Below are positions 114-32,857 of a stretch of 64,000 bases of DNA, piece after piece. The translations under genes were made by a program, and so were the position numbers. This DNA is from Macrostomum lignano (taxonomy: Eukaryota), in the NCBI GenBank assembly GCA_002269645.1, contig NIVC01003153.1, positions 52,346 through 116,345 on the forward strand, in the 5' to 3' direction. Position 1 is the first letter of the stretch; every line of letters begins with the position of its first letter. Below the pieces are notes generated by a model. It did no database searches and was not told where the DNA came from. It worked only from the letters and a program-made list of their open reading frames with translations.

Positions 114-3100
114 CTGGGTATAACAAATTAATATTTGCAGAATACTTCTGAAGCCAGCGCTGAGGCGAGTCTGCCTGACCCCGATGAATACGGTAACAGC
201 AGAGTCGTTGCAGGTAACACACAGGTAAAAATAGGAAAGAAGTGACTCTAGACGACTTGAAACCAACGATATATCACGGTAATAATATAATTATTATTTA
301 CACCTGCCTCAATAGGGCCAGATGAGCAACCGACAGCTCAGCCGCAGCTATTGCGCGGCGCATCTGAAGGCTGTGTACGGCTGTTCAGTCCAAGGACTGG
401 GGGGGGGGGTCGCCACACACCCTCAATTACCCCAGCTAATGCTGGCACCCATTTTACAGCTGGGTGAACTGAAGCAATGCAGAGTTAAGTGTCTCTTGCT
501 CAAGGACACAAATTGTTCCAGTGGGAACGAGAATCGAACCCCCGACCTTTCAGTCGTGAGTCCGATGCTCTAACTACTAGGCTACAACCCCATAATCACG
601 GTATAAGTCGCCAAAGAGTCGCCTAACAGTCAATTTGAAACGTATTATTGTCCGCGACTTCAAAACGACTCTGAGGCCGTAGAGTCGTACCTGAGGCGTG
701 CTGGGGTCGCTGCAGAATCACCGACTTGCGTCTAAAGCGGATCTGCGTCACTTGATGAATTAGAATCGCATTCATTTCGCATCTAAAGCAACTCTATTTA
801 GGTAGAAAGTCAATCGCTCTTAGACTCTTCCGACGACTTTAAGGCGACTCTTTTACGATTCTGCAACTCACGTGAGCCGCTCGTGACTCTTAATTGCATT
901 TTCAACGCTTGAGTCACCAGGCATGTACACTCCCTGTGCCTTGGGTGGGGGCTGTCCCTCTCTCATATGAGTGTGAATCGCAAGCCCCACATAAATGTGG
1001 CCTCACAAGTCATATCGAACAAAACTCGCGCATACCTTGGCCAAATTGTTCAGCGCGTGCGCAGCTTCGGCGCCGGGCCAGGAGTTGTCGTCGTGATTTT
1101 TTCTAAAAGCCACAACTCTAGACTCGGCGGCGGCTTGCGGCGGCCATTTTGGCAGGCCGGCTGCGACCCCGTCCCGGATGCTTGACAGCCAGCTGTCGAA
1201 GCGGCCGCTGTCAGCGTTGGCATCGAACTGGTGCTGCTGCTGCTCAGCTGAACACGGCAGGCTGGGGGCAACAGGCAGGGCGCAGTTGCACAGCTGCTGG
1301 CACAGAGGGCACAGGTAGCGGCTGCGGCCGAGCTCGCCGCCCCGGTTCACGTGCACATTAGACGGCGAGTCCATGAAGTCCGAATAGCAGGACCGGTGCA
1401 TGGCGTGGCCGCACGACGAGAAATGCGAGCCTTCCAATAGTTCGGCCTCGACAAAGCAGCCGGACCAGTCGGTGTCGCGGGACCGGCCTCGGTCCTGGCT
1501 GAGCACGGTGGAGCGCTGCACCAGTCCGGCTAGAAGCATGGGGTCCCTGGAGTCGGGCCGGTTGGCCTCCTGGCACAGCAGGCAGGTCAGGCCCGGCTGC
1601 GGCTCGTGCGCCACCGTGCGATTGGGGCCTGCGAAGATTGGGGTGGGGGAGGATGGTTTTGATTAATTTGCTATCTGCGCTACTATAAGTAGGCGATGGC
1701 CTAGCAATTTTTAATTTAGGTAATTTCGACTAGTAAATGTGAAATACCAGTTGAGGAATGTGAACTGCCGGAAAAGGAATGTGAAATGTTGATAAAGGAA
1801 TGTGAAATGTCGCTAAAGGAGTGTGAAATGTTGATAAAGGAGTGTGAAATGTTTATAAAGGAATGTGAAATGTTGATAAAGGAGTGTGAAATGTTGATAA
1901 AGGAGTGTGAAATGTTGATAAAGGAGTGTGAAATGTTGATAAAGGAGTGTGAAATGTTGATAAAGGAGTGTGAAATGTAGGTTAATAAATGTGAGAGGTT
2001 GGTGAGAAATGTGAAATGCCAGTACAGGTGAAGTGTCATAAAGACCGAAGCCCCCAGGCCTCACCAATAAGCGGTCCGTCGGACCGTCGACCAGCAGAAG
2101 TCGACTCTGTCGAATTCTCCGACGCTGTCGCTCCGCCGCTTTTATCGTCGGCCTGTTCAACCAAGTCGCCGTACTCGGCCAGGAAGTTCTTCTGCATTCG
2201 CATCATCTTGGCCATCAGGCGGTCCCGCCGATCCTGAGCCAGCTTCTGCTGCTGACGCCGACGAACCTCGGCCTCGGCGGCGTCCCTGGCCGCGTCCAGG
2301 CCGCCCGAGCCGCCACCGCCGACTTCTCCAGCCTCGTTGCCGCCACTTTCGCCGCCTTCGCCCTGACCGCTGCACAGTCGGCGAAGCCTCGCCAAAGTGT
2401 AGCCGTGCAGCTGCCTGACTGAGTCCATCGCCAGGCGCGATTTCGGCACCGATTCCATCGCCGACATCAAGCTGGCCTCGCCGATGCCAGACAGCACGCA
2501 GTCGAGAAATCGTCGATCGCCCCGACGTTGGTCTTCGTCAAGGCCTACTAGCATCAGGTAGAGGACTCGTTCCAGCTGCACCTCCGACCAATGCCGCTTC
2601 GAGCTGGCGCCGGCGTCCTTGGTTGCCTGGACAACGGCACGCATCAGGCCGAGCATGACGTCGCAGTGCAGCAATTCAACAATCGGCTGGTAGGCTGCGG
2701 CAAAGGCCAGCAGCTGCGGCGGCCGAACAATTGGCAGGTCGGCGGCTGGCGTAGCTGCCCGCCGTTTGGTCATGCTGTGCAGCGCCTTGGAGGTGGCCGA
2801 CTTGGCCAGGCGCGGGTAGAACGGATTGAACCGGCTGTAGTGCTGCTCGCGCAGGTGGAACTCGCCTTTGTTTTGGCCCTGACAGTGCAGGTTAGAAATA
2901 ATGTACATTCATTCTGTGTGTTAACTAGCTGGCCGTATCTTCGGTACTTCAGTGGGTACCCCTCAGGTATTTCAGCGGGTACCCTTCAGGTGTTTAAGCG
3001 GTTACCCCTCAGGTATTTCAGCGGGTACCCCTCAGGTGTTTAAGCGGTTACCCCTCAGGTATTTCAGCGGGTACCCCTCAGGTGTTTAAGCGGTTACCCC

Positions 3101-6100
3101 TCAGGTATTTCAGCGGGTACCCCTCAGGTGTTTAAGCGGTTACCCCTCAGGTATTTCAGCGGGTACCCCTCAGGTGTTTAAGCGGTTACCCCTCAGGTAT
3201 TTCAGCGGGTACCCCTCAGGTGTTTAAGCGGTTACCCCTCAGGTATTTCAGCGGGTACCCCTCAGGTGTTTAAGCGGTTACCCCTCAGGTATTTAAGCCG
3301 GTGCCCTCAGATACTTCAGCCGGTACCCTCAGATACTTCAGCCGGTACCCTCAGATACTTCAGCCGGTACCCTCAGATACTTCAGCCGGTACCCTCAGAT
3401 ACTTCAGCCGGTACCCTCAAGCACTTCAGCCGGTGCCCTCAGACACTGATTACGAAAAAGCCCACACTTATCGAGTCAAAGGTTGACACTCAGTTACTTT
3501 AACTCGCTACTGACAGTAGCAACTACGGAAAGCATAAAACCCAGACGCACCTGGACCCCCCGGAACTCGGCCAGCTTGTCAATAACTCCGTCCAATTTAG
3601 CAAAGCACTCCAGCTGCCTATCAGCCGCTGGCAATTTCCGCACTAAATCGTTAGCCAATCGCAGCAGTTTAGAATGCGACTGCGGCTCCGCAACCAGATG
3701 CTGCAACAAATCTTCTTCAACCATTTCCATAAAGGCTACAGACTGGCCAACGCCCGGCACTCTACGTTCGCACACCACATTGATGAGGCAGCGCAGCATC
3801 TCTTCAACAATAGACCGTTCGGCCTCATTGTCGTAGCGCTCGGCGGCAGATTCACTAGAACTCGCGGCTCCCAGAGTCCAGCGTTGCAATTCGAAAGCGT
3901 CCAGCAAGCGCAGTATGAACTGGTCTGGCGGCACCGTGGCAGCGGCCAGTTGCACCAGGTGCAGGTCTCTGAGGGACATGCCGACAGCGGCTGACTGGTG
4001 GCTGCTGTACTGCAGGTTCACATTCATCAGGGCCAAGCCGTTGCGTTTCCACAGGCCGGCGGCGATCTGGGCTGACCAAGCCAGCTGCCTGGCGGATGTC
4101 AGCCAGGCGATCTCGAAGCCCGGCCGGTTGGCCAGCAGCTCCAGCTGACGGCGGCACTGCGGCGAAGCCTCGTGATTGGCCATGGTGCAGGCCAGCAGTG
4201 AGTCCAGGAATCTGAGTAGGGGTGATGGAGAAACTTGTGGCAGTGAGATTCTGAGATGGGAGATTTCCAACAGTTTTTGAGCAGTGAGATTCTGAGATGG
4301 GAGATTTCCAACAGTTTTTGAGCAGTGAGATTCTGAGATGGGAGATTTCCAACAGTTTTTGAGCAGTGAGATTCTGAGATGGGAGATTTCCAACAGTTTT
4401 TGAGCAGTGAGATTCTGAGATGGGAGATTTCCAACAGTTTTTCAGCAGTGAGATTCTGAGATGGGAGATTTCTAACAGTTTTTGAGCAGTGAGATTCTGA
4501 GATGGGAGATTTCCAACAGTTTTTGAGCAGTGAGATTCTGAGATGGGAGATTTCCAACAGTTTTTCAGCAGTGAGATTCTGAGATGGGAGATTTCCAACA
4601 GTTTTTCAGCAGTGAGATTCTGAGATGGGAGATTTCTAACAGTTTTTGAGCAGTGAGATTCTGAGATGGGAGATTTCCAGCAGTTTTTGAGCAGTGAGAT
4701 TCTGAGATGGGAGATTTCTAACAGTTTTTGAGCAGTGAGATTCTGAGATGGGAGATTTCTAACAGTTTTTGAGCAGTGAGATTCTGAGATGGGAGATTTC
4801 CAACAGTTTTTGAGCAGTGAGATTCTGAGATGGGAGATTTCTAACAGTTTTTGAGCAGTGAGATTCTGAGATATCAGATTTCCAACAGTTTTTGAGCAGT
4901 GAGATTCTGAGCTGGGACACTTCAAACAGTGAGATTTTAAAGTTTGAGACTTTGATTAAATAGAGATAAAGAAGATCGAAAGTGAGATTTCAAACAAAGA
5001 CTACAAAGAGTCTCACCTGACCAGCGGTTGAAAGTGCGAAATGAACACCCGGCCGGACATGAGAGGAGCCAGCGCTCTCCCGGACAGCACGTGTCCGGCC
5101 AGACGGACTCTCTGTCCGGAATCGGCCAAGAAATTGGCACTGAGAGGCGGTTTCTGTTCAATAGCGTCGAGCACCTTGCCCAGTATAGTTGAGAACACGC
5201 TCTCATCTCTAGACAGGAACTCAGCCAGCAGGTGGTTCTGGTACATTGAGGACAGGAAGAAGATAAACGGCATCTCCCATTCGAAGTCGAAGCCGATGTG
5301 GCCAACAATGTAGCGCCTGGCGCAGCAGGTGTCCTGGAACAGGCTGTACACCTGCAGGAAGCTTGGCAGAGCCTCGTTAATTGCCGCGAAAAAGTTCGGC
5401 TCCAGTTGTTCGAAGTCGTTATGCAGCAGGTATTCGATATCGCGCACCAGGTGCAAGCTGCGATTCCAGCGCGAGAACGGCATTCGGTCATCTTCGCTGA
5501 ACTTCAGTAACTGCCGGCCAGACTCTTGATGCTGCTGGACCGAGCGTTGCAGCACCGACTTGATGAGAATGTCCACCAGAATCTTCAGGGCCTTCTGCTC
5601 CGTGATCAGGTACATCGCCTGCGGTAATCATGTTCAGTAATTAACGGTAAAATTAAAACATAGTCCTATTTGTACGTGCTTGCGTTTGGGGGGTGGTTGT
5701 TTGCAACGTGCGGCTGCGCCCGTGTGTGTGCAACACCCAAACCCCACCTCAATCTTCGGCTTATAAAATATATCGATTGTCAGGCCTGAGCGCCAAGTCG
5801 GTTTTCTCACAATCTCAAACCTCGCTCGTTTTACACTGGTGGCAGCGATGGACTCAACTCACACAAGTGAAAATAATGCTGCTTTGCTACCGCCGAAATT
5901 CTCCGGCCAGTCAAACGTGCACAAATGGCTCAGTGTCTTCGAAGACTTTGTAGAGGACAAAGGCTGGGACGACGCACAATCTGCTTCGAAGCTGAAGCTC
6001 CTGCTGCATGGTAAAGCCCAGATATGCGTTTGGGATCTGCCGGAGGCTGATAGGAAAAGCTACAAAAAGATAAAAGAGGTGCTACAAAAGCAGCCAGCCA

Positions 6101-9100
6101 GCATCGCGCCATGGAAGAGTTCCAAGATCGACGGAGAAACAGCGCAGAGACCCTGCGAGAGCTTTCGTACTCCTTGAGGCTGCTGTACATGACAGCACGG
6201 CCTGATGACTCCTCGGCGCTGCGAGATCGTGAGGTGAAATTTCGAATAATTCAGCTGATGACTGCGGACATACGCGACACCCTGCTCAAGGACAGGGACC
6301 TGGACTCCTGCACGCTGGAGGAGCTGGTCGAGCGGGCCACGAGGCTGGAGCAAATCGCGAGCAAATGCAAACCAGGCAACTCGCCCGCAGTGGCGATGGT
6401 TGACGATCGACTGGCACGGCTGGAGCAGCAGCTGGAGACCCTGACGGCTGCGGTGACGAGGGGCGGCAGCGCGAGAGGACGCGGTGGCGGCAGGCCGAGA
6501 GATCAGCAGCAGCGGTCATCAGGCTGCTTTCGGTGCGGTAAGGAAGCACGCGAAGGCGTATTCAGCATGCCAGTGAAGTATGAGACAGACTAGGCCTACG
6601 AGCTAAGGTCTGCGATGCTTCACGCCTGCCCCCATCTTCAGCAGGTCAAGGCTGGTGGGAGGTCTGCACCCTCTATTTGCCTCTGGCAGCCGCAGACTCC
6701 CCCACGCTGTCTCGCAAGTCGACCCAGGGGTACTCGTCCCGCGTGTGTTCAAGGCAGACCCTAGGGCTGCTGGACAGACTGGGCTCCGGCGCTGGCGACC
6801 CTATCCAGTGGCTTCGGCCGAATTTGGGTATGCGGGTCTGGCTCACCAGCCTGCAGGCCGTGGTACTGCTTAACGTACCCTCTAATGCCTAAGGTGTTTG
6901 ACCGTGCCGATGGGCTGGAAGGCCGGGGAGTAGTCCGGTCGCTAGCGGTCCTTTTTTCAAACCGGCTGGCTTGAGGTGTCGGCCAGTCGGGTACTCAACT
7001 CGCATAACGAGTAGCCCTCCCCCGCTTTTCAGCTATGGCCACTAACGCCACCATCTCTAAAGAAACTGACCCGGTCGCCTCTGGCTCACCGGGATCAGCC
7101 GCTCCGGTAGCTACCACTGGTAGCACCAACGCCCAACCTGGTCCAACCGGGCCAGCTGACGCTGCCGCCGATCACCCTGGCCGCCAGTCTAGCCGACCGC
7201 GCACGGCCGAGTCTCGACGACAGCGGAACATCCGCCGCAACCGTAAGCGGCAGGAGAAGCGGGCTGCTGCTGCGTCTGAGGAGGGCGGGCAAGCCGCGGT
7301 GAGGCCTTCGGGAGCCACCGCAGCGGGGAGGCCCTCTGGGGAGTCCGGTGGCGCGGCTGGGCCGTCAGGAACCGCCGTGTCCTCGGGCTCTCAGGGGGGC
7401 AACCCTGCCGGCCTACCGCCTTCCAAAGACAAAGCGGCCCCGCTCAAGACCTCCGAGTCCTACGCGTCCAAGGTCAAGCAGCCGCTGCAACCCACCGTGA
7501 TGATCCTCGGCGGGGATTTCGACCTGACGCCCGAGCAGCTCGACGTCGCGTGGCGTACCATCGACGAGGGCTTGCTCAATCTAACCCTGGAGGGCGTCTT
7601 CGTGGACATCGTCAAGTCCACCAAGGCGAACGGGTGCATCCTACTGTGGTGCAAATCCGAGGAGAGCACCCAGCTCCTGCGGGATCAGCTGCCCAAGTTC
7701 GACTGGCACAGCGACCTGGGCCAGCTGACCTTCGCCTTGGAGAGCGAGCGGCCGAAGACCATCCGCCATCGGATTTGGGTCCCGGCCGACAGTGCAATCA
7801 AGTCCGGGGAGCAGCTGCGGCAGCTCCTGCTCAAGCGGCACCCGGATCTCGACGCCAGTGGTCTTGTGTACCACAGCACGGTCCGCAAGGGCACGACCGG
7901 GGCCACAGTCATCCTCGGCCTGACGGAGGGATGGGCCAAGCGGCTACCGCACGGCACAAACCTCCACCTTGGTCTCCATCAACTGACCATCCTCCGCTGT
8001 GAGGAGGGCAAGGTGGAGACCAAGAAAGACGGGAAGCGCGCCGCTCCCGGAGCTGGGGCTCATGCCCCGCCGGCCAAGCGGCAGCAGCAACCCGATCCCG
8101 AGCCTAACAAGGCTATTCGCGCTGCTGAGTCCGCCTCGCGCGGACGTAGACCCGCCCGCAGTAGCCGGCGGTCCGGTCTAATCCAGCGCGCACTTGACGA
8201 AGCTCAGTCTCTGAGACTTCACCTCGAGCAGACTCGTGCCGCTCGCAAAAACACTGAAAGCCAGCCGAGGGAACTGGACGACGGCACGGCTCAGCCTTCC
8301 AACTGGTGGGATTACCACCAGGAGGACGCTGCCGGCCGAGCTCAGACTCCCGACGGCGGGGCGCAAGGCGAAGGCAGCAGCCGTACCCCAGTCGCTGGGG
8401 AGGAGGGCGGTGTAGCGCGGCTAGGTGACTCACCTGCCGTGGGCGCCGTGTCCGCCTCCGCGGCGGCTGGGGAGGCGGCTGAGCCTGAGCCAATGGAAAT
8501 TGGCGACTCAACTCTCACCGATGAGGCTGAGAATGAGTTGCTTTTCTCCTCCCCTGGACAGTAGACATGACTGTCTCCCAGGGCATCCACTGCTTGCAGG
8601 TCAACCTGCAGCACAGCATTGCTGCTTCAGTCAACCTCTTGAAGCACACTGACCAATACGTGCCAGGGATTATCCTTATCCAGGAACCTTGGACGCTTAG
8701 GGGCAGCCCCCAACATGTCCCCACCGGCTACCAGTGTTTAACCGCTGGTACCCGGGAGGGAAACCTGGCACCAAGATCCTGCATCATGGTGTCCAGTTCT
8801 ATTAACGCATGGCTCAGATCAGACCTGTCCACCAGGGACATCTGTGTCATCCAGTCTGAAGACATACTCCCTGGGAGGACTACCCTCATCGCCTCGGTTT
8901 ACCTACCGGGCGACGGCGAGATGATCCCAGTAGAGCTTGTCACACTGGTCGAGCTCTGCTCCACCAGAAACTATGAGCTGCTCGTGGCAGGTGACATCAA
9001 TGCCCACCACACCCACTGGGGCAGTTCTGATATAAACCAGAGAGGTGAAGACTTCCTGGCTTATATTGCTACTACAACCCTTGAGTTCTGTAACTCGGGT

Positions 9101-12100
9101 AGTACCCCTACCTTCAATAACGGACGCCGATCGGAGGTGCTGGATGCCACCCTCGCCACGCCCAGGCTCTTCCGGAGCACTAGGGAGTGGCGGGTGCTTC
9201 CTGAGGCGTCCCTCTCCGATCACAAGTTCATCTCTTTCACGCTGGCCAGCGCCCGTAACGCAGGCCAGCTTTACTGGAAACGGAATGCTAGGAATACCGA
9301 CTGGACCGCCTTCAGGCTTGCCCTGGAGGAGACCTATCGTTGCACTAGCACTCCAGTCTCCATCAACACCTGCGAAGAAGCAGATGAATTTGCGGCCGCA
9401 CTTACGGACTCGCTCACTGCTGCCTTCGAAGCCTCATGCCCACTAAAGGCATATAAAGGCAAACAGTCGGCCCCATGGTGGAACCCGCAGCTTGGCGACC
9501 TCCGTCGCAGAACCAAAAGGCTTCACCGCAGGGCCCAAAAAACTAAAAACCCGGCCGACCAAACCGCCTACCTGAACTCTATCCACGAGTTCAAGAGGCA
9601 GGTTAGGAACGCCAAAACCAACAAGTGGCGCGAATACTGTGAGGAACTTGAGGGCTCCCGCCCCACCTCCAGAATCGTTAAAGCCCTCACCCTGGACAAA
9701 ATGTCCAAACTCTCCTCAGTCAAGAGAGCCGACGGCTCGCTCACTGAGAACCCAGGAGAAACACTGGAAGCGATGCTAACAGCGTTTTTCCCGAACGAGC
9801 CAGCTAGGCCCGACCCCCCTGACCACTCAGTGGGCGGTCACGTACTGGCTGACTCAATCATCACGGAGGACCGCGTTACTAAAGCTGTCTCCTCCTTCAA
9901 ACCCTTCAAATCCCCAGGACCGGACGGCGTTGTGCCAGCCTTCCTGCGGGAGGCGGTGAAATGCACCGGTTTCCTGCGGAACCTTTGCCGGCTTCTGAAA
10001 GCTTGCATTGTGCTCGGCTTTGTTCCGAAATCCTGGACCGAGGCCAAGGTGGTCTTTATCCCCAAGCCTGGCCGACCGGACTACCGGTCCATTAAATCCT
10101 TCAGACCAATTAGCCTCACCTCCTCATTGGTGAAGCTGTTAGAGAGACTGGTGCTCTGGCGCCTCCTCTCTGTGGAACTGAAGAACAAGCCGCTCAGTGA
10201 GAACCAGCATGCCTTTCGGGCAGGCAGGTCCACGGAGAGCGCGCTTCACGTTCTGGTTGACATGCTGGAGAAAGCCGTTCTTGGTAATGGCTACGCTCTC
10301 GCTGTCTTCCTCGACATTGTTGGAGCCTTTGATAATGTCCTCTTTGAGGCTTTTGACAGAGCTCTACGTGCTAGAGGAACCCACTCGCACCTCACCCGGT
10401 GGATCATGTATATGATCAGCCACCGTACTGCCACCGCACACCTGTTGGGCCACCAACGGACGGTAACCGTCTGCAAAGGCAGCCCCCAGGGCGGTGTCCT
10501 CTCTCCAGTTCTCTGGAACATGGTCATCGATGAGCTCCTCCAGGACAGCCATCTTGACCCCATCCTCAAGGTCGGTTACGCCGATGATGTCACTGCCGTG
10601 GCATCCGGACCGTCACCTGAAACCCTTAGAGATCTTTTGCAAAACTTCATTCGCTCTGCTGAACGTTGGGCGGACAGGTGCGGCCTCAGGCTCTCCGAGA
10701 CCAAAACTGTCGCGATCATGTTCACCAGCAGGGTAAACTGGCGTATTCGCCCACTAAAGCTTTACGGGGTGGAAATTCCATCCTGCAAGCAAACCAAGTG
10801 TCTCGGCGTTACGTGGACCACCGGCTGAGCTGGTCCACCCACGTCCAGGCCAAAACCAAAAAAGCCCTCGCGATTCTTGCGCAGCTGCGCAGAGCCGTCG
10901 GCACCACCTGGGGCCTCACCCCAAAGCGTCTCTGGTGGATCTATACCGCAATGGTCCGACCGGCCGTTACTTACGCCGGCCTGGTCTGGACCAGCGCCTT
11001 GCAGATTAAAACCTGCCACGAAGCCCTCAAAAAGGTGCAGGGACGTGCGTGCCGCATGATCCTGAATGCCCCGCTCTCTGCTCCTTTGACGGCCTCAACG
11101 CCTTTCTCTGCCTCCCGCCTCTGGACATCTTTGCCCGTCGCGAGGCTGCTAAAACCACCCGCCGGCTCATCGAGGCTGGTGTTAGCTTCAAGCCACAAAG
11201 AGCGATGGCGAAGCGCAAGCTCCTGCCGCACTCTGATCTGTGCCTTAAAGTTCTGGAGGAGAGTGGGAGTGCGGCTGTCCTTTCGGACGCTGAGCCGCGC
11301 TCCCTCAATCTCTACCAACGCTTCAAGGTCACGATCCCCTCCAGGGAGAACGCCAACGACAGCTGGGCCCCTCAGGAGGTTCACTGCTTCACTGACGGAT
11401 CCTCCAAAGACGGTTTATCCGGCTTTGGAGTCTGTATCCTTATCAACGGCCGCGTGATTGCTACTCACGCCCAACACACTGGCAGACTCTCCAGCGTCTT
11501 CCAGAATGAAGTCCTTGCCATCAGCTCCTGTGCAGCTGAGCTCCACTGCAGGGACTTCAAGGACAGAAGAATCTTCTTCCACTCTGACAGCCAGGCCGCT
11601 TTACAGGCCCTGTGTCACACCACTACGAACTCCCGAACAGTCCGCGACTGTATCGGGCAGCTCAACAAGCTGGCTCGGAGAAACACCGTCCGGCTCACGT
11701 GGATTCCAGGACACGCCGGTTTCAAAGGTAACGAGCTCGCTGACTCCCTCGCTAAGGCGGGCTGTTCCGGCTCGCCCCTTGGCCCCGTGCCCCTGGCCCC
11801 CATCCCCGCCACAGTCATTAATCGTCAGATTAACGACTGGGCGGACATCCTGCACTTGCGCAGATGGGATGGTATCTCCAACTGCCGCCAATCTCGTGCG
11901 GCAGTGCCCAATCCGTCCCTCAAGCTGCGGAGAATCCTTTTGAATCAAAATCGAAAAGATATCCGCGCTCTCACTATGACCTTCACAGGTCACGGTTGCT
12001 TTGCCAGGCACTGCTTCCTCCGATGTGTTCGCCGGAGTGAACTCTGCCCCTTCTGCAGCCTCGAGAATGAAGATGCCAAGCACTTCGTCTGCTACTGCCC

Positions 12101-15100
12101 GGCCTTCAACCGAGACCGGCTCAACCACCTCGGGCCCAACCCGTCCCTGGACGACGTTTGCCGGCCCGAGAACATCCCACGGCTCATCCGGTTCCTCCGG
12201 GCCACCAAGCGAGCCTCCGTCTTCCCCACCGAAGACAACGCTGTAGACAGGACCGGCAGACCTCCCTGACCGGCCCCGCGCCCTAGCCTATGCGGGTCTT
12301 TCAGGGATTAGCGGAATGGGCGACGCTCGCCTCCCCGCTGCGTCTTCGGACCGCCCTGCAGCTAAGTCAAGTAAGTCAAGCGGTAAGGAAGGCCACATCG
12401 CCCGCCGGTGCCCTGCTGGCGGATCTCAGGGCCAAGGTCGCTGCTTCAACTGCTCCGGCTGGGGCCACAGCGCGGCTGTCTGTCCGTCAAAGGCTCGGCC
12501 GTCGGGAAACTTCTGAGGGTTGGCAGCGAAGGGCCAGCTCCAACCCGTCAATCAAGTGCCCAATCTGCACTCTCAATCTTCGTGCGTGCGCTTCTGCAAG
12601 GCAAGGAGGTCAGTTTCTTGCTCGACACTGGCGCACAGACATCCTTGATCAGCCGCAGCCTCGCGCAAGTCTGCGGCCTTCAGATCGAGCCCGGTGGAAG
12701 CTGCTGCCCGACTTCGGTCGATGGTGGCCGCCTGAGTTGCATCGGGATTGCCCGAGCCACAATTCAAGTCGGCCAGTCAGTCAAGGTTGTCCATCAGCTC
12801 AACGTGGTGGAGAACATCAGTCTGGATCTCATCCTCGGCATGGACTTCATCACCCGAACCACCCGAGAGCTTCAGATCGACATCGTTGGTAGGACCGTAT
12901 GCCTCAACGGAGAGAAAGTCCCGTTCTTAAACAGCAGCTCAAGCGTCCGAATGGTGACCGGCACCCTCGTTGCTCGAGTGGAAAGCAACACAAGTGTTCC
13001 AGCACGAAGCGAAAAGCTGGTGTGGCTCCGCGTCAAGTCGGAAGACGAGCAAGGCATCTTCGAGCCCGACGCCAACTTTACCCAAGCGACTGGTTTGCTT
13101 GTCTCGAGAGTTTTGACCGTTTCAGCTGATCAGAAGATTCCAGTCCGGGTGTGCAATTTAGGCTCCGAGGAGGTGCTACTCTACGCCAACAAGGCCGTCG
13201 GCTCTTTTGAAGCTGCCGACCTGATCAACAACAGCGCTGGCACAGTCAAGCAGTTGGACTGCTGGGTTGTCAACCCTGACTTGGATGCGGCTGACAGGCA
13301 GAGACTACTGGCACTACTCAAGGCGAACGGTGACCTGTTCAGCACTCACGAGTACGACCTTGGCTCCACCGCGCTGCTGAAACATCGTATCGAGCTGCAG
13401 CCCGGCACGCAGCCCTACAAGCAGCGCCAGCGACCGATTCCGCTGCCGGTTCGTGACCAGGTCGACCAGAAAATTGGCCAGATGCTGGAGCACGACATCA
13501 TTGAGCCGTCCAACTCGCCCTGGGCCAGCAATCTTATCGTCGTCCGGAAAAAGAGCGGCGACATCCGCCTATGCACCGACTGGCGTCAGTTGAACGCTGT
13601 GACCATCAAGGACGCCTACCCCCTGCCGCACCTGCAACAATCGATGGATGCTCTGGCGGGCTGCTCTTGGTTTACCACCATCGATTGCAAGCAGGGGTTC
13701 AACCAGGTCGTGGTCGACGAGGCAGACCGCTACAAGACTGCTTTCTATTCCACACGAGGCCTTATGCAGTTCAAGAAGATGGGCTTCGGTATGTGCAACT
13801 CTCCTGCGACCTTCCAGAGGCTAATGGAGCTCGTTATGTCCGGCCTGACCTGGGAGGAGGTGCTAGTCTACGTGGACGACTTGATCGTGTTCAGTCGGAG
13901 CTTCGAAGAGCATCTGGCCAGCCTGCGCAAAGTTTTCGACCGGCTGCGAGCTGCGGGACTGAAGCTCAACAAGGACAAGTCGGTGTTCGCTCACAGGAGC
14001 GTGAAGTACCTGGGCCACATCGTCAGCCGGGAAGGAATTCGGCCGGATCCGGACAAAGTGGAGGCCCTGGCCAAGATTCAGTCACCAAGCTCTGCCGAGG
14101 AGGTGCGACGATTCATCGGCATGTTGTGCTTCTATCGCAGATTCATCAGGGACTTCAGCAAGACAGCGGCACCACTGCATGCCGCAACACAGAAGACGGG
14201 CTTCACCTGGACAGACGAGTGCGAGACGGCCTTCCAGACGCTCAAGGAGCAACTTGGGCGAGCACCTGTGCTTCGCCTGCCGGACTTCCGCCGACCATTT
14301 GTCCTGAGCTGCGACGCCAGCGCCTTCGCAGTGGGTGCGGTTCTCTGCCAGCGTTACGGAGACGCGGAGCTTCCAGTGGCATTTGCCTCCAGGACCCTCA
14401 ACAAGGCGGAACGAAATTACTCGGCCACTGACAGGGAACTGCTCGCCTTGGTTTGGAGTCTCAAGCACTTCAGAGCCTACCTGTGCAACGTGAGAGACTT
14501 CACTGTGTTTACCGATCACCAGCCGCTCAAGGGCCTGCTGCAGACCAAGGAGCCAGAGGGTCGGCTGGCACGTTGGCTCGACACCATCCAGCAGTTCAAT
14601 TTCGCGCTCTGCTATCGGCCAGGGCGGGAGAACGTGGTGCCAGACGTGCTCAGTCGGACGGCTGTCACTCAACTGGCAAATCGCGATGACTTCCTGGCAG
14701 AGCAGCTCCGAGACAGCCTTCTGCAGAATGTCTTCAAGGCGATCAGTGACGGCTTCGTCCACCTGTCCAAAGGCTGTCGGCAGCGAGTCGAAGAATTCCT
14801 AGCAAATGGCGACATCCAGATCGGGCAACACGGTGAGCTGGTCCGGCAGGGCAAACCGGTGGTGCCCAGTCACCTGCGTGCGCAGTTCCTGGCTGACGCG
14901 CACGACGCCGCCTGCAGCGGTCACCTCGGCACAGACCGAACGCTGGACAAGCTCGCCGACCGCTGCTGGTGGCCGGGCATGCACAACGACGTCAAGAACT
15001 GGGTCGCCAGCTGCGCCGCTTGTCTTCGGCGGAAGAACAGCAGTCGGCCGCAGCGAGCACCACTGCAAGCGACTCCACTGCCGTCGAGGCCATGGGAGAT

Positions 15101-16630
15101 GGTCCAGATCGATATCAAGGGTCCGCTGCTAAGGACACCACGAGGCAACAGTTACGTGCTGAGCATTGCATCTGTGACTGCTTCTCAAAGTGGATGGAGA
15201 CCTGCGCTCTACCAAGCATCGAGGCTGAGCGGGTGGCCGACGCTCTGGTCAGGCAGGTAGCGCTTCGGCACGGCGTCCCAGACGCAATCCACAGCGACCA
15301 AGGGCGTCAATTCGAAAGCCATCTGTTCCAGTCCCTGTGCCAGCGGCTCGGCATGCAGAAAAGCCGCACTTCGCCTTTCCATCCTAGCGGCAACGGCCTG
15401 GTTGAGCGCGGAAACCGAACCCTTGGTGACATGCTAGCGACGGTTGTGGCAGAGGATCAGGACGACTGGGACCTCCAACTTGCCTTCGTCACGCGGGCCT
15501 TCAACAGCTCGGTGCACTCGACCACGGGCCTGTCGCCGTACCAGACGCTGCACGGATGGCCACCAAGGCTGCCAATCGACTCCAAGCTGCCCAAAGCATC
15601 GGATGGCTTCACTGATGCGCTGGACTTTGCAGAGGCGACTCAGAGGCGCCTGCTGGACAGCCGGGCGCGTGTCCATCAGCAGCTGCAGGCGTCGCAGACC
15701 GAGCGCAACGAGCGGTACAACATGGAGACTCGGTTCCGGCCGTACAAAGAGGGCGACTTGGTGATGCTGAGCTGCAAGGTGGTGAAACCTGGCAGATCAA
15801 AAAGCCTCAGTAACCGCTGGACCGGGCCGTACATCATCCTGAAGAGGCTCGGCGAGGTCAACTACCGAGTGCGGCCGGCCTCGGGTCCCGGCGTGCGGAT
15901 GCGACGCAGGCAGGTGGTGCACCACGACCGGCTCAAACCATTTGTGGAACGGCGCAACTCCTTACGGCCCGGCGACGACCTGCAGGCTACCGCAGACGAG
16001 ACTGCTGACGGACTGGTGGACCCTCAGCTCCAGGCGCCTGATGCCTGGGTGCAGCTGTTCGACGGTAACGGCGGACCGGATGAGACAGCGACCGAGACCA
16101 ATCAGCAAGAGGCTCAGCTGCCGAGACGGTCGGCCAGAGAGCAAAGACCTCCTGATTTTTATCGCCCAATGTGAATGCTTGATTTTCTGTGAACTTTTGC
16201 CATAGACATTGTGTTGCGTCTTTTAAACCCGGGGGGAAGTGGTGTGAGCATTCTATGCACCTAAATATTCTAATGTTGTTCGTAGTCCTATTTGTACGTG
16301 CTTGCGTTTGGGGGGGTGGTTGTTTGCAACGTGCGGCTGCGCCCGTGTGTGTGCAACACCCAAACCCCACCTCAATCTTCGGCTTATAAAATATATCGAT
16401 TGTCAGGCCTGAGCGCCAAGTCGGTTTTCTCACAATCTCAAACCTCGCTCGTTTTACAGAATGGAGACTAACTGACTAACTAACTAACTGACTGACTAAC
16501 TGACTGACTGACTGACTAACTGACTGACTAACTAACTGACTGACTAACTGACTGACTAACTGACTAACTGACTGACTAACTAACTGACTAACTGACTGAC
16601 TGACTAACTAACTGACTAACTGACTAACTG

Positions 16631-16685
<55 letters not shown>

Positions 16686-19600
16686 GACTAACTGACTGAC
16701 TGACTAACTAACTGACTAACTGACTAACTAACTGACTGACTGACTAACTGACTAACAACTGACTAACTAACTAACTAACTTACTGACTGAATGACTAACT
16801 AATTAACTGACTGACTGACTAACTGACTGACTGACTAACTGACTAACTGACTAACTGACTAACTGACTGACTGACTGACTGACTAACTAACTAACTGACT
16901 AACTAACTGACTAACTGACTAACTGACTGACTAACTGACTAACTAACTGACTAACTGGTTACCCCAATCGGGACAATAAAATGGGGGCAGAGAAGCTACA
17001 GGGCCGCAGAGTTTGCTCTGGTAGATAGGTAGATAGATATAAAAGGACCAGTAGGCATTCGGGAGGGAGGATTATCAGGCGATCCAGAACAGCATCCCAT
17101 GCACTCTACTAACAGTAAGTGTGCATAACAACCAGAAATGCGTTACCAAGGATGGCGAAGTGAAGAGCTGCACAGACAGCTGAGCAATAGAGTCCTCCTG
17201 ATGATGCATGTCCACGCAGAATCTCTCAAATATTTGCTCCTGATTCACAGCGTACAGAGCGGCAATCTGGCGCTTGTAGTTGGCCTTCATCAGCAGCGAC
17301 TTGATCAGCATCTCGATAAAGGATTTGCGAGCTGCTTTCCACAGGTGATCGGTGTGCACCAGCAGGTAGTACACCAGAGGCTGCCCTGGTGCCCATTCGG
17401 TGCCGGGAAAGTTATCAACGGGGGCCAGAAGGCTTTGGCAGAACAGCTCGTGCAGACCGTCTGGAAAATGTGCAGGCCTTGCGTGAAATACCAGCATGTA
17501 CAATGCACTGACCAGAATCATGTACAATGCACTGACCAGAATCATGTACAATGCACTGACCAGAATCATGTACACTGCACTGACCAGAATCATGTACACT
17601 GCACTGACCAGAATCATGTACAATGCACTGACCAGAATCATGTACAATGCACTGACCAGAATCATGTACAATGCACTGACCAGAATCATGTACAATGCAC
17701 TGACCAGAATCATGTACAATGCACTGACCAGAATCATGTACAATCAACTGACCAGAATCATGTACAATGCACTGACCAGAATCATGTACAATGCACTGAC
17801 CAGAATCATGTACAATGCACTGACCAGAATCATGTACAATCAACTGACCAGAATCATGTACAATGCACTGACCAGAATCATGTACAATGCACTGACCAGA
17901 ATCATGTACAATGCACTGACCAGAATCATGTACAATCCACTGACCAGAATCATGTACAATGCACTGACCAGAATCATGTACAATGCACTGACCAGAATCA
18001 TGTACAATCAACTGACCAGAATCATGTACAATGCACTGACCAGAATCATGTACAATCCACTGACCAGAATCATGTACAATGCACTGACCAGAATCATGTA
18101 CAATGCACTGACCAGAATCATGTACAATCCACTGACCAGAATCATGTACAATGCACTGACCAGAATCATGTACAATGCACTGACCAGAATCATGTACAAT
18201 CAACTGACCAGAATCATGTACAATGCACTGACCAGAATCATGTACAATGCACTGACCAGAATCATGTACAATGCACTGACCAGAATCATGTACAATCAAC
18301 TGACCAGAATCATGTACAATCAACTGACCAGAATCATGTACAATCCACTGACCAGAATCATGTACAATTCACTGATCCCAAATCATGTACAATGCACTGA
18401 CCAGAATCATGTACAATGCACTGACCAGAATCATGTACAATCAACTGACCAGAATCATGTACAATCCACTGACCAGAATCATGTACAATTCACTGATCCC
18501 AAATCATGTACAATCCACTGACCAGAATCATGTACAATGCACTGACCAGAATCATGTACAATGCACTGACCAGAATCATGTACAATCAACTGACCAGAAT
18601 CATGTACAATGCACTGACCAAAATCATGTACACTGCACTGACCAGAATCATGTACAATGCACTGACCAGAATCATGTACAATGCACTGACCGGAATCATG
18701 TACAATGCACTGACCAGAATCATGTACAATGCACTGACCAGAATCATGTACAATCAACTGACCAGAATCATGTACAATCAACTGACCAGAATCATGTACA
18801 ATCCACTGACCAGAATCATGTACAATTCACTGATCCCAAATCATGTACAATCCTCTGACCAGAATCATGTACAATCCACTGACCAGAATCATGTACAATT
18901 CACTGATCCCAAAACATGTACAATGCACTGATCCCAAATCATGTACAATGCACTGACCAAAATCATGTACAATGCACTGACCAAAATTATGTACAATGCA
19001 CTGATCCCAAATCATGTACAAACTCACCAGACTGCTTAATAAGCTGGCCCAGCCAGCTCAGCAGGTACAAGCACATTGATTGATAAGCGAACGACACTGA
19101 GCGGACAGGGTAGCAACCGAGCTCGAAGCCGCTGGACTCCCTGATGGTGCCGCGAATCTCTGAGCACAGCTTCTTGGCTGAGGCCCAGTCGGACAAGCTT
19201 ACAACGCTTCGACCGTCGTTATCAACCACAGTGGCAAAGTGATTGGCATCGTGCTCATCGACGCCCAGGCACTGGGTCAGCGTGTTGATTACCTGGTTGC
19301 GATGCAAGTTTTATTTATGGATAGCTATGGATAGCATAAGGCCTGAGTTGTTTTGTCTGTTGTTACATAGACATGTAAATTCCGGATGCCATTTATTTCA
19401 AAGACCCCTAAATTTCTGATGCCATTTGTCACATTGACCCCTAAATTTCTGATGCCATTTGTCACATTGACCCCTAAATTTCTGATGCCATTTGTCACAT
19501 TGACCCCTAAATTTCTGATGCCATTTGTCACATTGACCCCTAAATTTCTGATGCCATTTGTCACATTGACCCCTAAATTTCTGATGCCATTTGTCACATT

Positions 19601-23410: not shown

Positions 23411-23447
23411 AGTCAATCCTTGATAGCAGGGACCCCAGTGAGTGTCG

Positions 23448-23882
23448 GATCCCAGTGATGGACCAGACTGAGGGTGCTGGATGGATCCCAGTGATGGACC
23501 AGACTGAGGGTGCTGAATGGATCCCAATGATGGACCAGACTGAGGGTGCTGAATGGATCCCAGTGATGGACCAGACTGATGGTGCTGAATGGATCCCAGT
23601 GATGGACCAGACTGAGGGTGCTGAATGGATCCCAGTGATGGACCAGACTGAGGGTGCTGAATGGATCCCAGTGATGGACCAGACTGAGGGTGCTGAATGG
23701 ATCCCAGTGATGGACCAGACTGAGGGTGCTGAATGGATCCCAGTGATGGACCAGACTGAGGGTGCTGAATGGATCCCAGTGATGGACCAGACTGAGGGTG
23801 CTGAATGGATCCCAATGATGGACCAGACTGAGGGTGCTGAATGGATCCCAGTGATGGACCAGACTAAGCATTGGATCCCAGT
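23448..23882. repeat. 36-bp minisatellite, ~12 copies, just upstream of the UBR ATG
   Basis: GGATCCCAGTGATGGACCAGACTGAGGGTGCTGAAT. Confidence 0.95.
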
Positions 23883-31272: not shown

Positions 31273-32857
31273 GGCATGAAACGTTATCAAAAACAACCCA
31301 AGTAAACGCACTTTTCTGGAGTGGAGAATGAGAGCAACTCAACAGCCATGCCACTCAGGCTTGCTTATATCCCCACTAATTAACTCGTCCCCCGTAGCTT
31401 TGGATCCTAAACTGTTTAGTAGAGTAAATTCTGTTCTCTTAACTATAGGAGGGGATAGTGAAGCTAAAAAATAACTGCAACAGAATTTGAGGCTTGCTTG
31501 CCTGAGATGGGGGTAGCATTGCAAGTCACGTGCCTGTAACACAACCTGCACAGGGGGATGAATGAACAGTATGAAGGGAGGAACGGGGAGAGATGCAATT
31601 GCAGATGTTTAATTTATCTAGCAGTTGGGCACCTGGAGAGTGACTTATCCGCTGCTATGATAAAAAAAATTAATTGCTGTGTTGACAGCCCCCCTTCCTG
31701 ATGCAGTGTTATTGTATCAAACTAAGCAATAGGGATAAGAAAGGATAAGAACTTTAAAAAAATTATGTTACGTTATTATGTTACGATAATGAGTCAATCA
31801 CATTTTGTATTTCTCTGCGGCACGTATGCGGGTATGCACGTATTGCCTTAGTTAAAGCCAAGACATTTAGACTTTGGTAAAAGTGACTTCAATTAGGCAG
31901 CCCATAGAGAAAGCTTCTGCCGGCAAGGCAACATGTCTATGGTAAACTCAAGGACCACTAGAAGTTGCCGTTTTGCCTGAAAGCGAACTTAAATACAAAT
32001 GAAGTTGTGATAGTGTACATGTTTTTAGTTGACTCTAACTTTTCATTTTTTCATTAATTACTTTGATTGTTGGAGTCCATGACGGGCTGGTGTGCCAAGA
32101 TTTCGGAAATATTGCCTTTATGATTCTGAGCTTCTGAGCTATATCCAGTTATATTATTCATCCATGGCTACAGAGGACTAAATTGGATGTCCGCAAGATT
32201 GAATCAACTAAAAGTTTTTTACCATGCCAAATTTGGGATTAGTTGTCTTTAGGGCGTGGGGCTTGGGAGAGAGAGAGAGAATATTCTCATCCGTGCTTGT
32301 CCAGCGTTACCTCACCTGGCCGTATTGCAGGAGTTTGACGTCATTGAATTTTATAGGGAAAAAGTTACAATGGCAAGTTAGATGCGCTGCTGCTGCATCG
32401 TCAAGTTTGGATGTTTATCTAGTGCTTATTTATATATTTTATTTCGTTAGGATGATTTTGGCCAAAAAAACCCGACAACGGAGCTTAGTTGTTTATGCAT
32501 CATCGGATATCGGATGAAATGAGGCAATGAGAAATATGACAGTTGCTTACGAGTAGAGTCTGTGTCTCAAGTACCAGGATCAGGTAAGCCGATTTATGGG
32601 GAAATTATTAATTATTTTCAACAGTCCATAGTGTTGTGCCACTTGCTTAAGATATCAAAGTAACAAATATTTAACTAAGAAAAGTAAAAGACAGCAACTG
32701 TTTACCAATGTTAGTACTCATATTTATAAATAAAAGGAAACTTGGGTGCACTTTGAGTCAGCTTCAGATAGAATAGTGTTCTTTTATCGATGTTTATCGG
32801 TCGGACATTGTTGGCGTCAGATTTATCTTCATCATGACGCTGACGCTGCTCAGCAAT

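What the first reader, a model, noticed from the sequence alone, without database searches (positions are those of the whole stretch)
6546..6783. HDV-like self-cleaving ribozyme whose predicted cleavage site is exactly the LINE 5' end
Seen: every element of the nested double pseudoknot can be placed. P1 is GCACGC/GCGTGT with a G.U first pair; J1/2 is ~170 nt; P2 is CCCAG/CTGGG; P3 is GGG/CCC; L3 is UACUCGU. P1.1 is an A-U/C-G pair instead of the usual CC/GG. P4 is a hairpin and J4/2 is C-A-G-A. P1 starts at G6546, right at the TSD boundary, and that coincidence is independent support. Known: HDV-like ribozymes process the 5' ends of R2, RTE, L1Tc and LOA-type elements. Inference: this is a variant ribozyme (6-bp P1, AC/GU P1.1) in a non-insect I-group element, able to cut its RNA out of Gypsy read-through transcripts.
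Basis: partly seen in the sequence, partly recalled or inferred. Interest (0 to 1): 0.85.

Follow-up and report, generated by a model that had tools for sequence, protein, structure and literature searches.

The report
HDV-like ribozyme at LINE start
The first 238 bases of a LINE retrotransposon, inserted inside a Gypsy element, fold like the known HDV-type self-cutting RNA, and two distant relatives keep the same fold through matched mutations, so it is probably a new example of a known way for such elements to trim their own RNA start.

Summary
P1 is 6546-51/6741-46, P2 6723-27/6779-83, P3 6728-30/6738-40 and L3 6731-37. P1.1 is 6732-33/6747-48, P4 6753-71, and J4/2 is C6775-A-G-A. The LINE runs 6546-12379 with a perfect 12-bp TSD, so P1 starts at the element's first base.

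Chance is unlikely: 1 of 30,000 shuffles of the 5'UTR gave a match anchored at base 1.

Two relatives were found (ORF2 60% and ORF1 47% identical). They keep the fold: 43 of 44 cells pair, and six pairs changed on both sides (two each in P1, P2, P1.1). Slid controls gave 0-1. One relative's contig begins at the homologous G.

This is best read as an HDV-like 5'-processing ribozyme, as in R2, Baggins, RTE and L1Tc elements. The 6-bp P1, non-GC P1.1 and 171-nt J1/2 all have published precedents, so it is a new member, not a new variant.

Caveats:
- Cleavage is untested.
- Only three sequences are available.
- There is no Rfam hit.
- Only the C of J4/2 is conserved.
- The P1 3' strand also has internal partners, which allows an alternative fold.
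- Host and LINE clade are not established.

The parts
5661..5835 (+). Gypsy 5' LTR (partner 16283-16458, 99.4% identical). It is a possible source of read-through transcripts into the LINE.
6535..6546 (+). Upstream copy of the target-site duplication GCGGTAAGGAAG. Its last G is also P1 base 1.
6546..12379 (+). LINE element: 5'UTR 6546-7034, ORF1 7035-8564, and ORF2 (APE-RT-RNase H) 8567-12269 with two frameshifts. The 3' end is a TAAGTCAAG-type repeat with no poly(A).
6546..6551 (+). P1 5' strand GCACGC. The predicted cleavage site is between A6545 and G6546.
6552..6722 (+). J1/2, 171 nt, a structured peripheral domain. It contains a conserved hairpin at 6573-6623. It also holds hexamers 6556-6561 (GCGTAT) and 6710-6715 (TCTCGC), which can pair with each other or with the P1 strands. 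The conserved linker AAGTCGA lies at 6716-6722.
6723..6727 (+). P2 5' strand CCCAG
6728..6740 (+). P3 hairpin: GGG, L3 TACTCGT (6731-6737), CCC. Positions U1, C5, G6 and U7 of L3 are invariant in the three sequences.
   Evidence: PMC3774820
6741..6746 (+). P1 3' strand GCGTGT
6747..6748 (+). P1.1 3' strand GT, pairing with C6733 and A6732 of L3
6749..6774 (+). J1/4 (TCAA), P4 hairpin 6753-6771 (8 pairs, one mismatch), then GGA
6775..6778 (+). J4/2 CAGA. C6775 is the candidate catalytic cytosine and is invariant in the three sequences.
6779..6783 (+). P2 3' strand CTGGG
6784..7034 (+). Rest of the 5'UTR: conserved and structured. 16 of 66 predicted pairs have compensatory changes. Role unknown; it may help translate an uncapped RNA.
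12380..12391 (+). Downstream copy of the target-site duplication

Best explanation
Bases 6546-6783 encode an HDV-like (nested double-pseudoknot) self-cleaving ribozyme that sets the 5' end of this LINE family's RNA.

Inferred mechanism:
1. Transcription starts upstream, here most plausibly at the Gypsy 5' LTR (5661-5835), and runs into the LINE.
2. The 171-nt J1/2 domain folds on itself and brings the terminal hexamer GCACGC to GCGTGT next to the P3/L3 core.
3. P2 and the two-pair P1.1 close the double pseudoknot.
4. C6775 in J4/2, together with a divalent metal ion held near the L3 U/G pair, cuts between A6545 and G6546.
5. The LINE RNA then starts with a 5'-OH at its own first base, free of Gypsy sequence. 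Full-length reverse transcription copies the whole ribozyme into the next insertion.

Shown: the sequence anatomy, the exact element boundary, conservation and covariation in relatives, and energetic plausibility.

Inferred: transcription from upstream, catalysis, the catalytic role of C6775, and any role of the structured UTR in translation.
For: 1. All helices and joining strands are present at the stated coordinates.
2. The LINE boundary is fixed by a perfect 12-bp TSD and a restored gag frame.
3. Only 1 of 30,000 shuffles of the UTR gave a match anchored at base 1.
4. Two relatives (L002, ORF2 60% identical; L001, ORF1 47% identical) keep the fold. Over 17 pairs, 97.7% of cells pair. Six pairs changed on both sides: P1 A-U to C-G and C-G to U-A; P2 C-G to U-A and G-C to A-U; both P1.1 pairs. 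P2 also gained a paired A-U insertion. Slid controls gave 0-1 such pairs, and 3 of 500 shuffles reached the observed values.
5. The descriptor tuned on the window gives one full match in L002, with P1 at contig base 1. It gives none in the 5' regions of five more distant LINEs.
6. In both sequences that include the 5' end, the best complement of the P1 3' strand within about 170 nt upstream is the terminal hexamer.
7. Unpaired core positions match published conserved features. L3 keeps U...C-G-U, and the literature reports a conserved C and G and a G/U reverse wobble (PMC3774820, PMC13635239). A C sits four bases before the P2 3' strand in all three sequences. The window has an A three bases after that C, as in C57/A60 of the C. 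briggsae ribozyme (PMC13635239).
8. The forced ribozyme fold lies within about 2 kcal/mol of the unconstrained minimum in both the window and L002. In L002 a 9-bp helix closes J1/2 with 4- and 7-nt linkers. This is the 'pinch' layout that activates large HDV-like ribozymes (PMC4908430).
9. There is precedent: R2, R4, Dong, Baggins, RTE and L1Tc carry such ribozymes at their 5' ends. Baggins and RTE are transcribed from upstream LTR elements or introns (PMC3774820, PMC6765202).
Against: - There are no cleavage data.
- Only three sequences exist, and only two of them cover P1, so the covariation statistics are thin.
- No Rfam HDV-like family matches, even at E<=10 on the isolated core.
- J4/2 is CAGA, CGTG and CTGC in the three sequences. 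Only the C is conserved, and the relatives lack the A seen in characterised ribozymes.
- The compensatory changes of the terminal hexamer are equally matched by a local partner (6556-6561). This would form a 5' hairpin that competes with P1.
- The P1 3' strand also has internal partners at 6702-6707 (5 of 6 pairs) and 6710-6715 (4 of 6 here, 6 of 6 in L001).
- The window copy lacks the strong J1/2 closing helix seen in L002.
- Its ORF2 is frameshifted twice, so this copy may be decaying.
- L002's 5' end is a contig end, not a mapped RNA or TSD-defined end.
Confidence: 0.7

Rival explanations
1. The 5'UTR is a conserved, structured but non-catalytic RNA, for example an internal promoter region, a protein-binding pseudoknot or an IRES-like leader. 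The 5' end is set by transcription initiation at base 1. The HDV-like fold is either a dead relic or a look-alike.
For: - The whole 490-nt UTR is conserved and structured, not only the ribozyme part.
- The terminal hexamer can form a covarying 5' hairpin with 6556-6561.
- J4/2 is not conserved beyond the C.
- No Rfam family matches.
- In L1Tc the same bases serve as both promoter and ribozyme (PMC3383444), so other roles for this region are plausible.
Against: - This does not explain why P2, P1.1 and the long-range P1 all covary in the exact HDV topology.
- It does not explain why the best partner of the P1 3' strand sits at base 1 in two diverged elements.
- It does not explain why the L3 and J4/2 positions that stay fixed are the ones reported as conserved in HDV-like ribozymes.
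Confidence: 0.15
2. The working ribozyme is a compact one. Its P1 is the proximal hexamer just 5' of the conserved AAGYCGM linker (window 6710-6715, L001 76-81, L002 157-162). It would cut inside the UTR at 6709/6710, and the terminal complementarity would be secondary.
For: - The proximal hexamer pairs with the P1 3' strand in 6 of 6 positions in L001 (with G at +1), 5 of 6 in L002 and 4 of 6 in the window. L001 and L002 differ by two compensatory changes here.
- A 7-nt J1/2 is the usual size for this ribozyme family (PMC4908430).
Against: - Cutting there would remove the first 164 nt at every generation. Yet that stretch is kept and conserved in the window, L002 and (in part) L001.
- In the window the proximal helix has two U-U mismatches, while the terminal one is complete.
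- In L002 the proximal hexamer is better used as the 3' strand of the 9-bp helix that closes J1/2.
- Internal duplicates of P1 are an expected by-product of 5' extension in the R2 model (PMC3774820).
Confidence: 0.08
3. It is a chance match of a loose structural descriptor in GC-rich sequence.
For: - Core-only matches occur at the chance rate: 3 observed against 3.3 expected per window.
- A full match somewhere in a shuffled window has an expectation of 0.15.
- The descriptor was built after seeing the site.
Against: - The anchored chance is about 3e-5.
- The match is replicated independently in L002 at contig base 1.
- Six pairs have compensatory changes, against 0-1 in slid controls.
Confidence: 0.03

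Closest known systems
R2 (and R4/Dong) 5' HDV-like ribozymes, especially the silkmoth R2 ribozymes
   Same: - The double-pseudoknot ribozyme sits at the very 5' end of a non-LTR element and frees it from a co-transcript.
- P1 is 6-7 bp, P2 at least 5 bp, and P4 is variable.
- Few bases are fixed beyond the catalytic C and a few L3 positions.
- J1/2 loops reach 216-498 nt, and P1 and its 3' strand can be up to 700 nt apart.
- Internal duplicates of P1 arise by 5' extension (PMC3774820).
   Different: - R2 is site-specific in 28S rDNA, has a single ORF with a restriction-like endonuclease, and is transcribed with rRNA. It often cuts upstream inside the 28S sequence.
- Here the element has two ORFs with APE, RT and RNase H, inserted in a Gypsy gag, and the predicted cut is at element base 1.
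- There is no detectable sequence similarity to curated models.
Baggins (LOA-type) and RTE ribozymes such as drz-Agam-2-1
   Same: - These are APE-type LINEs without a known promoter of their own. They are transcribed from introns or upstream LTR elements and cut at their 5' end (PMC6765202).
- Large structured J1/2 domains with short linkers 'pinch' P1 and P2 together and speed cleavage (PMC4908430). L002 shows this layout: a 9-bp closing helix with 4- and 7-nt linkers.
   Different: - The J1/2 here is a 171-nt multi-hairpin domain.
- P2 is only 5-6 bp, against 12 bp in Agam-2.
- The window copy lacks a strong closing helix.
- The host is probably not an insect.
L1TcRz (Pr77) of the Trypanosoma cruzi L1Tc/ingi clade
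   Same: An HDV-like ribozyme sits at base 1 of a dispersed LINE and acts co-transcriptionally. The same stretch may also serve in transcription or translation (PMC3185411, PMC3383444).
   Different: L1TcRz is compact (77 nt) and doubles as a promoter. Here the fold spans 238 nt, and no promoter function has been examined.
Cellular and phage HDV-like ribozymes with non-GC P1.1 (C. briggsae, Ackermannviridae)
   Same: The P1.1 helix is built from U:A plus C:U or U:U pairs, yet these ribozymes are fast. An A lies three bases after the catalytic C and contacts P3 (PMC13635239). The window has C-G/A-U, L002 has U-A/C-G and L001 has C-G/U.U.
   Different: Those ribozymes are compact, are not at LINE 5' ends, and have been shown to be active.
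Twister-variant ribozymes of Schistosoma mansoni non-LTR elements
   Same: They are reported to function in non-LTR retrotransposition in a flatworm (PMC8501958).
   Different: They belong to a different ribozyme fold (twister, not a double pseudoknot).

Membership tests
HDV-like self-cleaving ribozymes | Nested double-pseudoknot order: P1, J1/2, P2, P3, L3, P3', P1', P1.1, P4, J4/2, P2' | tested here: met
   All elements are placed in that order at 6546-6783. The same order holds in L001 and L002.
HDV-like self-cleaving ribozymes | P1 of 6-7 bp whose first base is the base 3' of the cut | tested here: met
   G6546.U6746 plus 5 Watson-Crick pairs. L002 has 6 of 6 Watson-Crick pairs with G at +1. 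The size range is from PMC4908430 and PMC3774820.
HDV-like self-cleaving ribozymes | 3-bp P3 closing an L3 of about 7 nt, with a conserved U and G (reverse wobble) and a conserved C | tested here: met
   GGG/CCC closes UACUCGU. U1, C5, G6 and U7 are invariant in the three sequences. The conserved features are from PMC3774820 and PMC13635239.
HDV-like self-cleaving ribozymes | P1.1 of 1-2 pairs between L3 and the bases following the P1 3' strand | tested here: met
   C-G/A-U in the window, U-A/C-G in L002 (both pairs compensatory) and C-G/U.U in L001.
HDV-like self-cleaving ribozymes | Catalytic cytosine in J4/2 | tested here: inconclusive
   A C lies four bases before the P2 3' strand in all three sequences (C6775). 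The rest of J4/2 is not conserved (CAGA, CGTG, CTGC), and its catalytic role cannot be tested here.
HDV-like self-cleaving ribozymes | Helices supported by covariation | tested here: met
   Six of 17 pairs changed on both sides and 97.7% of cells pair. Slid controls gave 0-1. With only three sequences the support is modest.
HDV-like self-cleaving ribozymes | Site-specific, divalent-ion-dependent self-cleavage giving 5'-OH and 2',3'-cyclic phosphate ends | not testable with these tools
   Needs a bench assay.
Curated Rfam HDV-like families (covariance models) | Score at or above the gathering threshold, or at least a weak match | tested here: not met
   No HDV-like family appears at gathering threshold over the whole window. 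None appears at E<=10 on 6000-7500, on 6690-6800 or on L001 1-300. The Rfam families are narrow and cannot bridge a 171-nt J1/2.
LINE 5'-end processing ribozymes (R2, Baggins, RTE, L1Tc type) | The cleavage site coincides with the element's 5' end | tested here: met
   The TSD and restored gag frame put the boundary at 6546/6547. The L002 contig starts at the homologous G.
LINE 5'-end processing ribozymes (R2, Baggins, RTE, L1Tc type) | The element is transcribed as part of a longer upstream transcript | not testable with these tools
   The context is permissive: the Gypsy 5' LTR lies 711 nt upstream on the same strand. No transcript data are available.
   APE, RT and RNase H are present. ORF1 has no Pfam domain, and a relative has only a weak DUF4780 hit. 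No phylogeny against reference clades was possible.

The most novel reading that the evidence does not exclude
The family carries a built-in conformational switch made of four mutually complementary hexamers: 6546-51, 6556-61, 6710-15 and 6741-46 in the window, and 1-6, 11-16, 157-162 and 189-194 in L002.

- One pairing set gives the active ribozyme: the terminal P1 plus a helix closing the 171-nt J1/2.
- The other set gives a 5' hairpin plus a compact pseudo-P1.

The switch would time or gate cleavage during transcription, or choose between a full-length and a 164-nt-shorter RNA. A LINE ribozyme would then be regulated by its own leader.
Probability: 0.2. Interest if true: 0.55.

Novelty: new member of a known kind. 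Interest (0 to 1): 0.4.

Why it matters
- It would add a small, RNase H-bearing LINE family to the elements that trim their own 5' end with an HDV-like ribozyme. The only named relatives of this family are flatworm proteins.
- It gives a clear natural example of a LINE nested in an LTR element in the right orientation for read-through plus self-release.
- The family offers a large, conserved J1/2 domain and a set of competing pairings. These could be used to study how peripheral domains and alternative folds control this ribozyme class.
- It does not change the picture of how such elements work.

Tried and rejected
- **Rfam scans.** I ran gathering threshold on the whole window and E<=10 on 6000-7500, 6690-6800 and L001 1-300. 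Only chance miRNA/lncRNA hits appeared.
- **Second copy in the window.** None was found.
- **More family copies.**
  - A full-length ORF1 search gave one hit.
  - An ORF1 core alignment search gave nothing.
  - The single metagenome scan, using the J1/2 motif CTAAGGTCTNCGATG, returned 119 loci. None was homologous by BLAST.
  - Core-pattern and ORF1-based scans of prokaryote genomes and viral contigs gave nothing.
  - The contig of the 56% ORF2 relative had no DNA available.
  - L003 lacks the 5' region.
- **More distant ORF2 relatives.** Five loci at 32-37% ORF2 identity (L123-L127) have unrelated 5' regions and no descriptor match.
- **Alignment for pair counting.** MAFFT mis-registered P4 and the P2 3' strand on the core. 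I therefore counted pairs on an alignment with J1/2 and the P4 hairpin removed, and in a coordinate-based table.
- **Literature.** The original papers of Webb 2009 and Ruminski 2011 were not held. Their content is cited only through papers that I could read.
- **ORF1 representatives.** I did not look up DNA for the ORF1 representatives found, because the look-up tool does not admit them.
Full report
**What is in the sequence**

The window around the finding is a nested pair of retroelements.

- A Gypsy-type LTR element has LTRs at 5661-5835 and 16283-16458, 99.4% identical.
- Its gag starts at 6111. Its protease-RT-RNase H-integrase region lies at 12408-16174.
- A 5.8-kb LINE is inserted in the first gag zinc knuckle, on the same strand.
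- The LINE is flanked by a perfect 12-bp duplication, GCGGTAAGGAAG, at 6535-6546 and 12380-12391.
- Joining the flanks restores a gag frame with two CCHC knuckles.
- The LINE has a 489-nt 5'UTR and an ORF1 (7035-8564) with no Pfam domain.
- Its ORF2 carries APE, RT and RNase H. ORF2 is broken by two frameshifts near 10813 and 11067-11151 when compared with an intact relative.
- The 3' end is a TAAGTCAAG-type repeat rather than poly(A).

**Check of the observation**

- P1 is GCACGC 6546-51 with GCGTGT 6741-46, G.U first.
- J1/2 is 171 nt.
- P2 is CCCAG 6723-27 with CTGGG 6779-83.
- P3 is GGG/CCC around L3 UACUCGU.
- P1.1 is C6733-G6747 and A6732-U6748.
- P4 is a hairpin at 6753-71: 8 pairs, one mismatch.
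- J4/2 is C6775-A-G-A.

G6546 is the last base of the TSD and also the first base of P1, so the boundary is ambiguous by one base.

A descriptor of this looseness is not rare. Shuffled windows give about 3.3 cores and 0.15 full matches, against 3 cores and 1 full match observed. A match anchored at the element's first base is rare: 1 in 30,000 dinucleotide shuffles of the UTR. The descriptor was tuned on this site, so I allow a factor of 10-100.

**Relatives**

The window holds no second copy. Protein searches led to two related elements.

- L001 is a JGI metagenome contig with ORF1 47% identical. It starts about 90 nt inside the UTR, so its terminal P1 strand is missing.
- L002 is a Logan contig with ORF2 60% identical. 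It is a full-length element, and the contig begins exactly at the base homologous to G6546.

The 5'UTRs align at about 70-75% identity, although ORF1 is only 39-47% identical. This points to constraint on the RNA or DNA of the leader.

No further family members could be obtained. The ORF1 family is small: 27 clusters among 1.84 billion representatives. The only named relatives of ORF2 are Macrostomum lignano fragments at 55-66% identity. The host may be a flatworm, but this was not tested.

**Comparative test of the fold**

I counted pairs on an alignment with J1/2 and the P4 hairpin removed so that it stays in register.

- 17 pairs of P1, P2, P3 and P1.1 were counted, and 97.7% of cells form standard pairs.
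- Six pairs changed on both sides:
  - P1 positions 3 and 4: A-U to C-G, and C-G to U-A.
  - P2 positions 2 and 5: C-G to U-A, and G-C to A-U.
  - Both P1.1 pairs: C-G/A-U to U-A/C-G.
- P2 also gained a paired A-U insertion in both relatives.
- Sliding the 3' partners by 1-3 columns gives 0-1 such pairs and 21-51% pairing.
- P4 is a hairpin in all three sequences, with G.U, G-C and U-A at its outermost pair.
- The unpaired positions that stay fixed are U1, C5, G6 and U7 of L3, the AA of J1/4, and the C four bases before the P2 3' strand.

These fixed positions fit published features: a conserved C and G in L3, a G/U reverse wobble that holds the metal ion, and the catalytic C (PMC3774820, PMC13635239).

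The descriptor tuned on the window finds one full match in L002, with P1 at contig base 1. It finds none upstream of ORF1 in five more distant LINEs. In both sequences that include the 5' end, the terminal hexamer is the best complement of the P1 3' strand within about 170 nt upstream.

**Energetics and the J1/2 domain**

I forced P1 and P3 and kept the pseudoknot strands free. The window then folds at -85.5 kcal/mol, plus about -6.7 for P2, against an unconstrained -94.3. L002 folds at -122.3, plus about -6.5, against -130.8. The ribozyme fold is therefore competitive in both.

J1/2 contains a hairpin conserved between the window (6573-6623) and L002, with compensatory changes. In L002 a 9-bp helix (11-19 with 154-162) closes J1/2, leaving 4- and 7-nt linkers. 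This is the 'pinch' layout shown to activate large HDV-like ribozymes (PMC4908430). In the window only three pairs of that helix remain.

**Complications**

1. The terminal hexamer has a second covarying partner 4 nt downstream (6556-6561; L002 11-16). The two compensatory changes in P1 are therefore not unique evidence for P1.
2. The P1 3' strand has internal partners: 6702-07 (5 of 6 pairs) and 6710-15 (4 of 6 here, 5 of 6 in L002, 6 of 6 in L001).
   - Together the four hexamers allow two pairing sets. One is P1 plus the J1/2 closing helix. The other is a 5' hairpin plus a compact pseudo-P1.
   - A compact ribozyme cutting at 6709/6710 would discard the conserved first 164 nt at each generation, so I rank it as a minor rival or an alternative conformer.
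   - Internal P1 duplicates are also expected from the 5'-extension model proposed for R2 (PMC3774820).
3. J4/2 is CAGA here but CGTG and CTGC in the relatives. Only the window has the A three bases after the C that contacts P3 in a solved structure (PMC13635239).
4. No Rfam HDV-like model matches, even on the core alone.
5. Nothing here shows cleavage.

**Most likely mechanism**

Transcripts starting upstream, here most plausibly at the Gypsy 5' LTR 711 nt away on the same strand, run into the LINE. The leader folds into the double pseudoknot, and C6775 with a bound metal ion cuts between A6545 and G6546. The LINE RNA then begins at its own first base with a 5'-OH.

The rest of the UTR (6784-7034) is also conserved and structured: 16 of 66 predicted pairs have compensatory changes. 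It may help translate the uncapped RNA, as proposed for R2 and L1Tc (PMC6765202). This is inference only.

**Comparison with what is known**

HDV-like ribozymes at LINE 5' ends are established for R2, R4, Dong, Baggins, RTE and L1Tc (PMC3774820, PMC6765202, PMC3185411).

- P1 of 6-7 bp is normal (PMC4908430, PMC3774820).
- P1.1 with U:A and non-canonical pairs occurs in fast ribozymes (PMC13635239).
- J1/2 reaches 216-498 nt, and P1 and its 3' strand can be more than 700 nt apart (PMC3774820).

In flatworms, an R2 ribozyme is predicted for a planarian R2 element (PMC3774820), and twister variants have been linked to Schistosoma LINEs (PMC8501958). This site is therefore a new member of a known kind, in a small LINE family whose host and clade are still to be fixed.

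**Verdict**

The fold and its position are backed by independent comparative evidence. The 'variant' and 'I-group, non-insect' labels are not.
- Confidence that this family's leader is an HDV-like 5'-processing ribozyme is about 0.7.
- Interest is moderate (0.4).
- The most novel reading still open is a leader-encoded switch between two pairing sets (probability about 0.2).

Noticed in passing
window 6784-7034 (and L001 153-523, L002 238-601): The rest of the LINE 5'UTR is conserved and structured. RNAalifold predicts 66 pairs, 16 of them with compensatory changes. A 26-nt block, GGGGAGTAGTCCGGTCGCTAGCGGTC, is identical in the window and L001. Compared with the window, L001 and L002 carry extra sequence totalling roughly 110 nt, mainly at two places (about window 6810-6830 and after about 6950).
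   Followed up: partly
window 6546-6551, 6556-6561, 6710-6715, 6741-6746 (L002 1-6, 11-16, 157-162, 189-194): Four mutually complementary hexamers allow two alternative pairing sets. One is P1 plus a J1/2 closing helix. The other is a 5' hairpin plus a compact pseudo-P1. All four covary between the window and L002.
   Followed up: partly
window 5661-5835 and 16283-16458; gag 6111 onward; pol 12408-16174: The host Gypsy element has short 176-bp LTRs that are 99.4% identical, and a PBS-like TGGTGGCAGCG right after the 5' LTR. Its gag has two CCHC knuckles, and the first is split by the LINE. Both insertions look recent.
   Followed up: partly
window about 10813 and 11067-11151: The LINE ORF2 changes frame twice relative to the intact 1232-aa ORF2 of L002. 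This copy is not autonomous, unless the shifts are assembly errors.
   Followed up: partly
window 12290-12379; L002 about 5880-5963: The LINE 3'UTR is also conserved between the window and L002: ..TTAGCGGAATGGGCG.., and the end ..CCCTGCAGCTAAGTCAA. It ends in a short TAAGTCAAG-type repeat instead of poly(A).
   Followed up: no
window 1694-2029, 2851-3375, 4117-5072, 16382-16900, 17351-18800, 19294-19755, 20017-21100, 21538-22900, 23375-23940: There are many long minisatellite arrays with periods of 8-41 nt. They flank and follow the Gypsy element, including directly after its 3' LTR.
   Followed up: no
window 7035-8564 (ORF1): ORF1 belongs to a very small family: 27 clusters at E<=0.001 among 1.84 billion representatives. 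Several are embedded in 2000-3900-aa fused gene models. It has no Pfam domain, and a relative has only a weak DUF4780 hit.
   Followed up: partly
window 4940-5025, 32556-32640 (+); minus-strand scan coordinates 20573-20670 (not converted to plus-strand coordinates): Other 'core-only' matches to the HDV-like descriptor occur without a P1 partner. Their number matches the chance expectation.
   Followed up: yes
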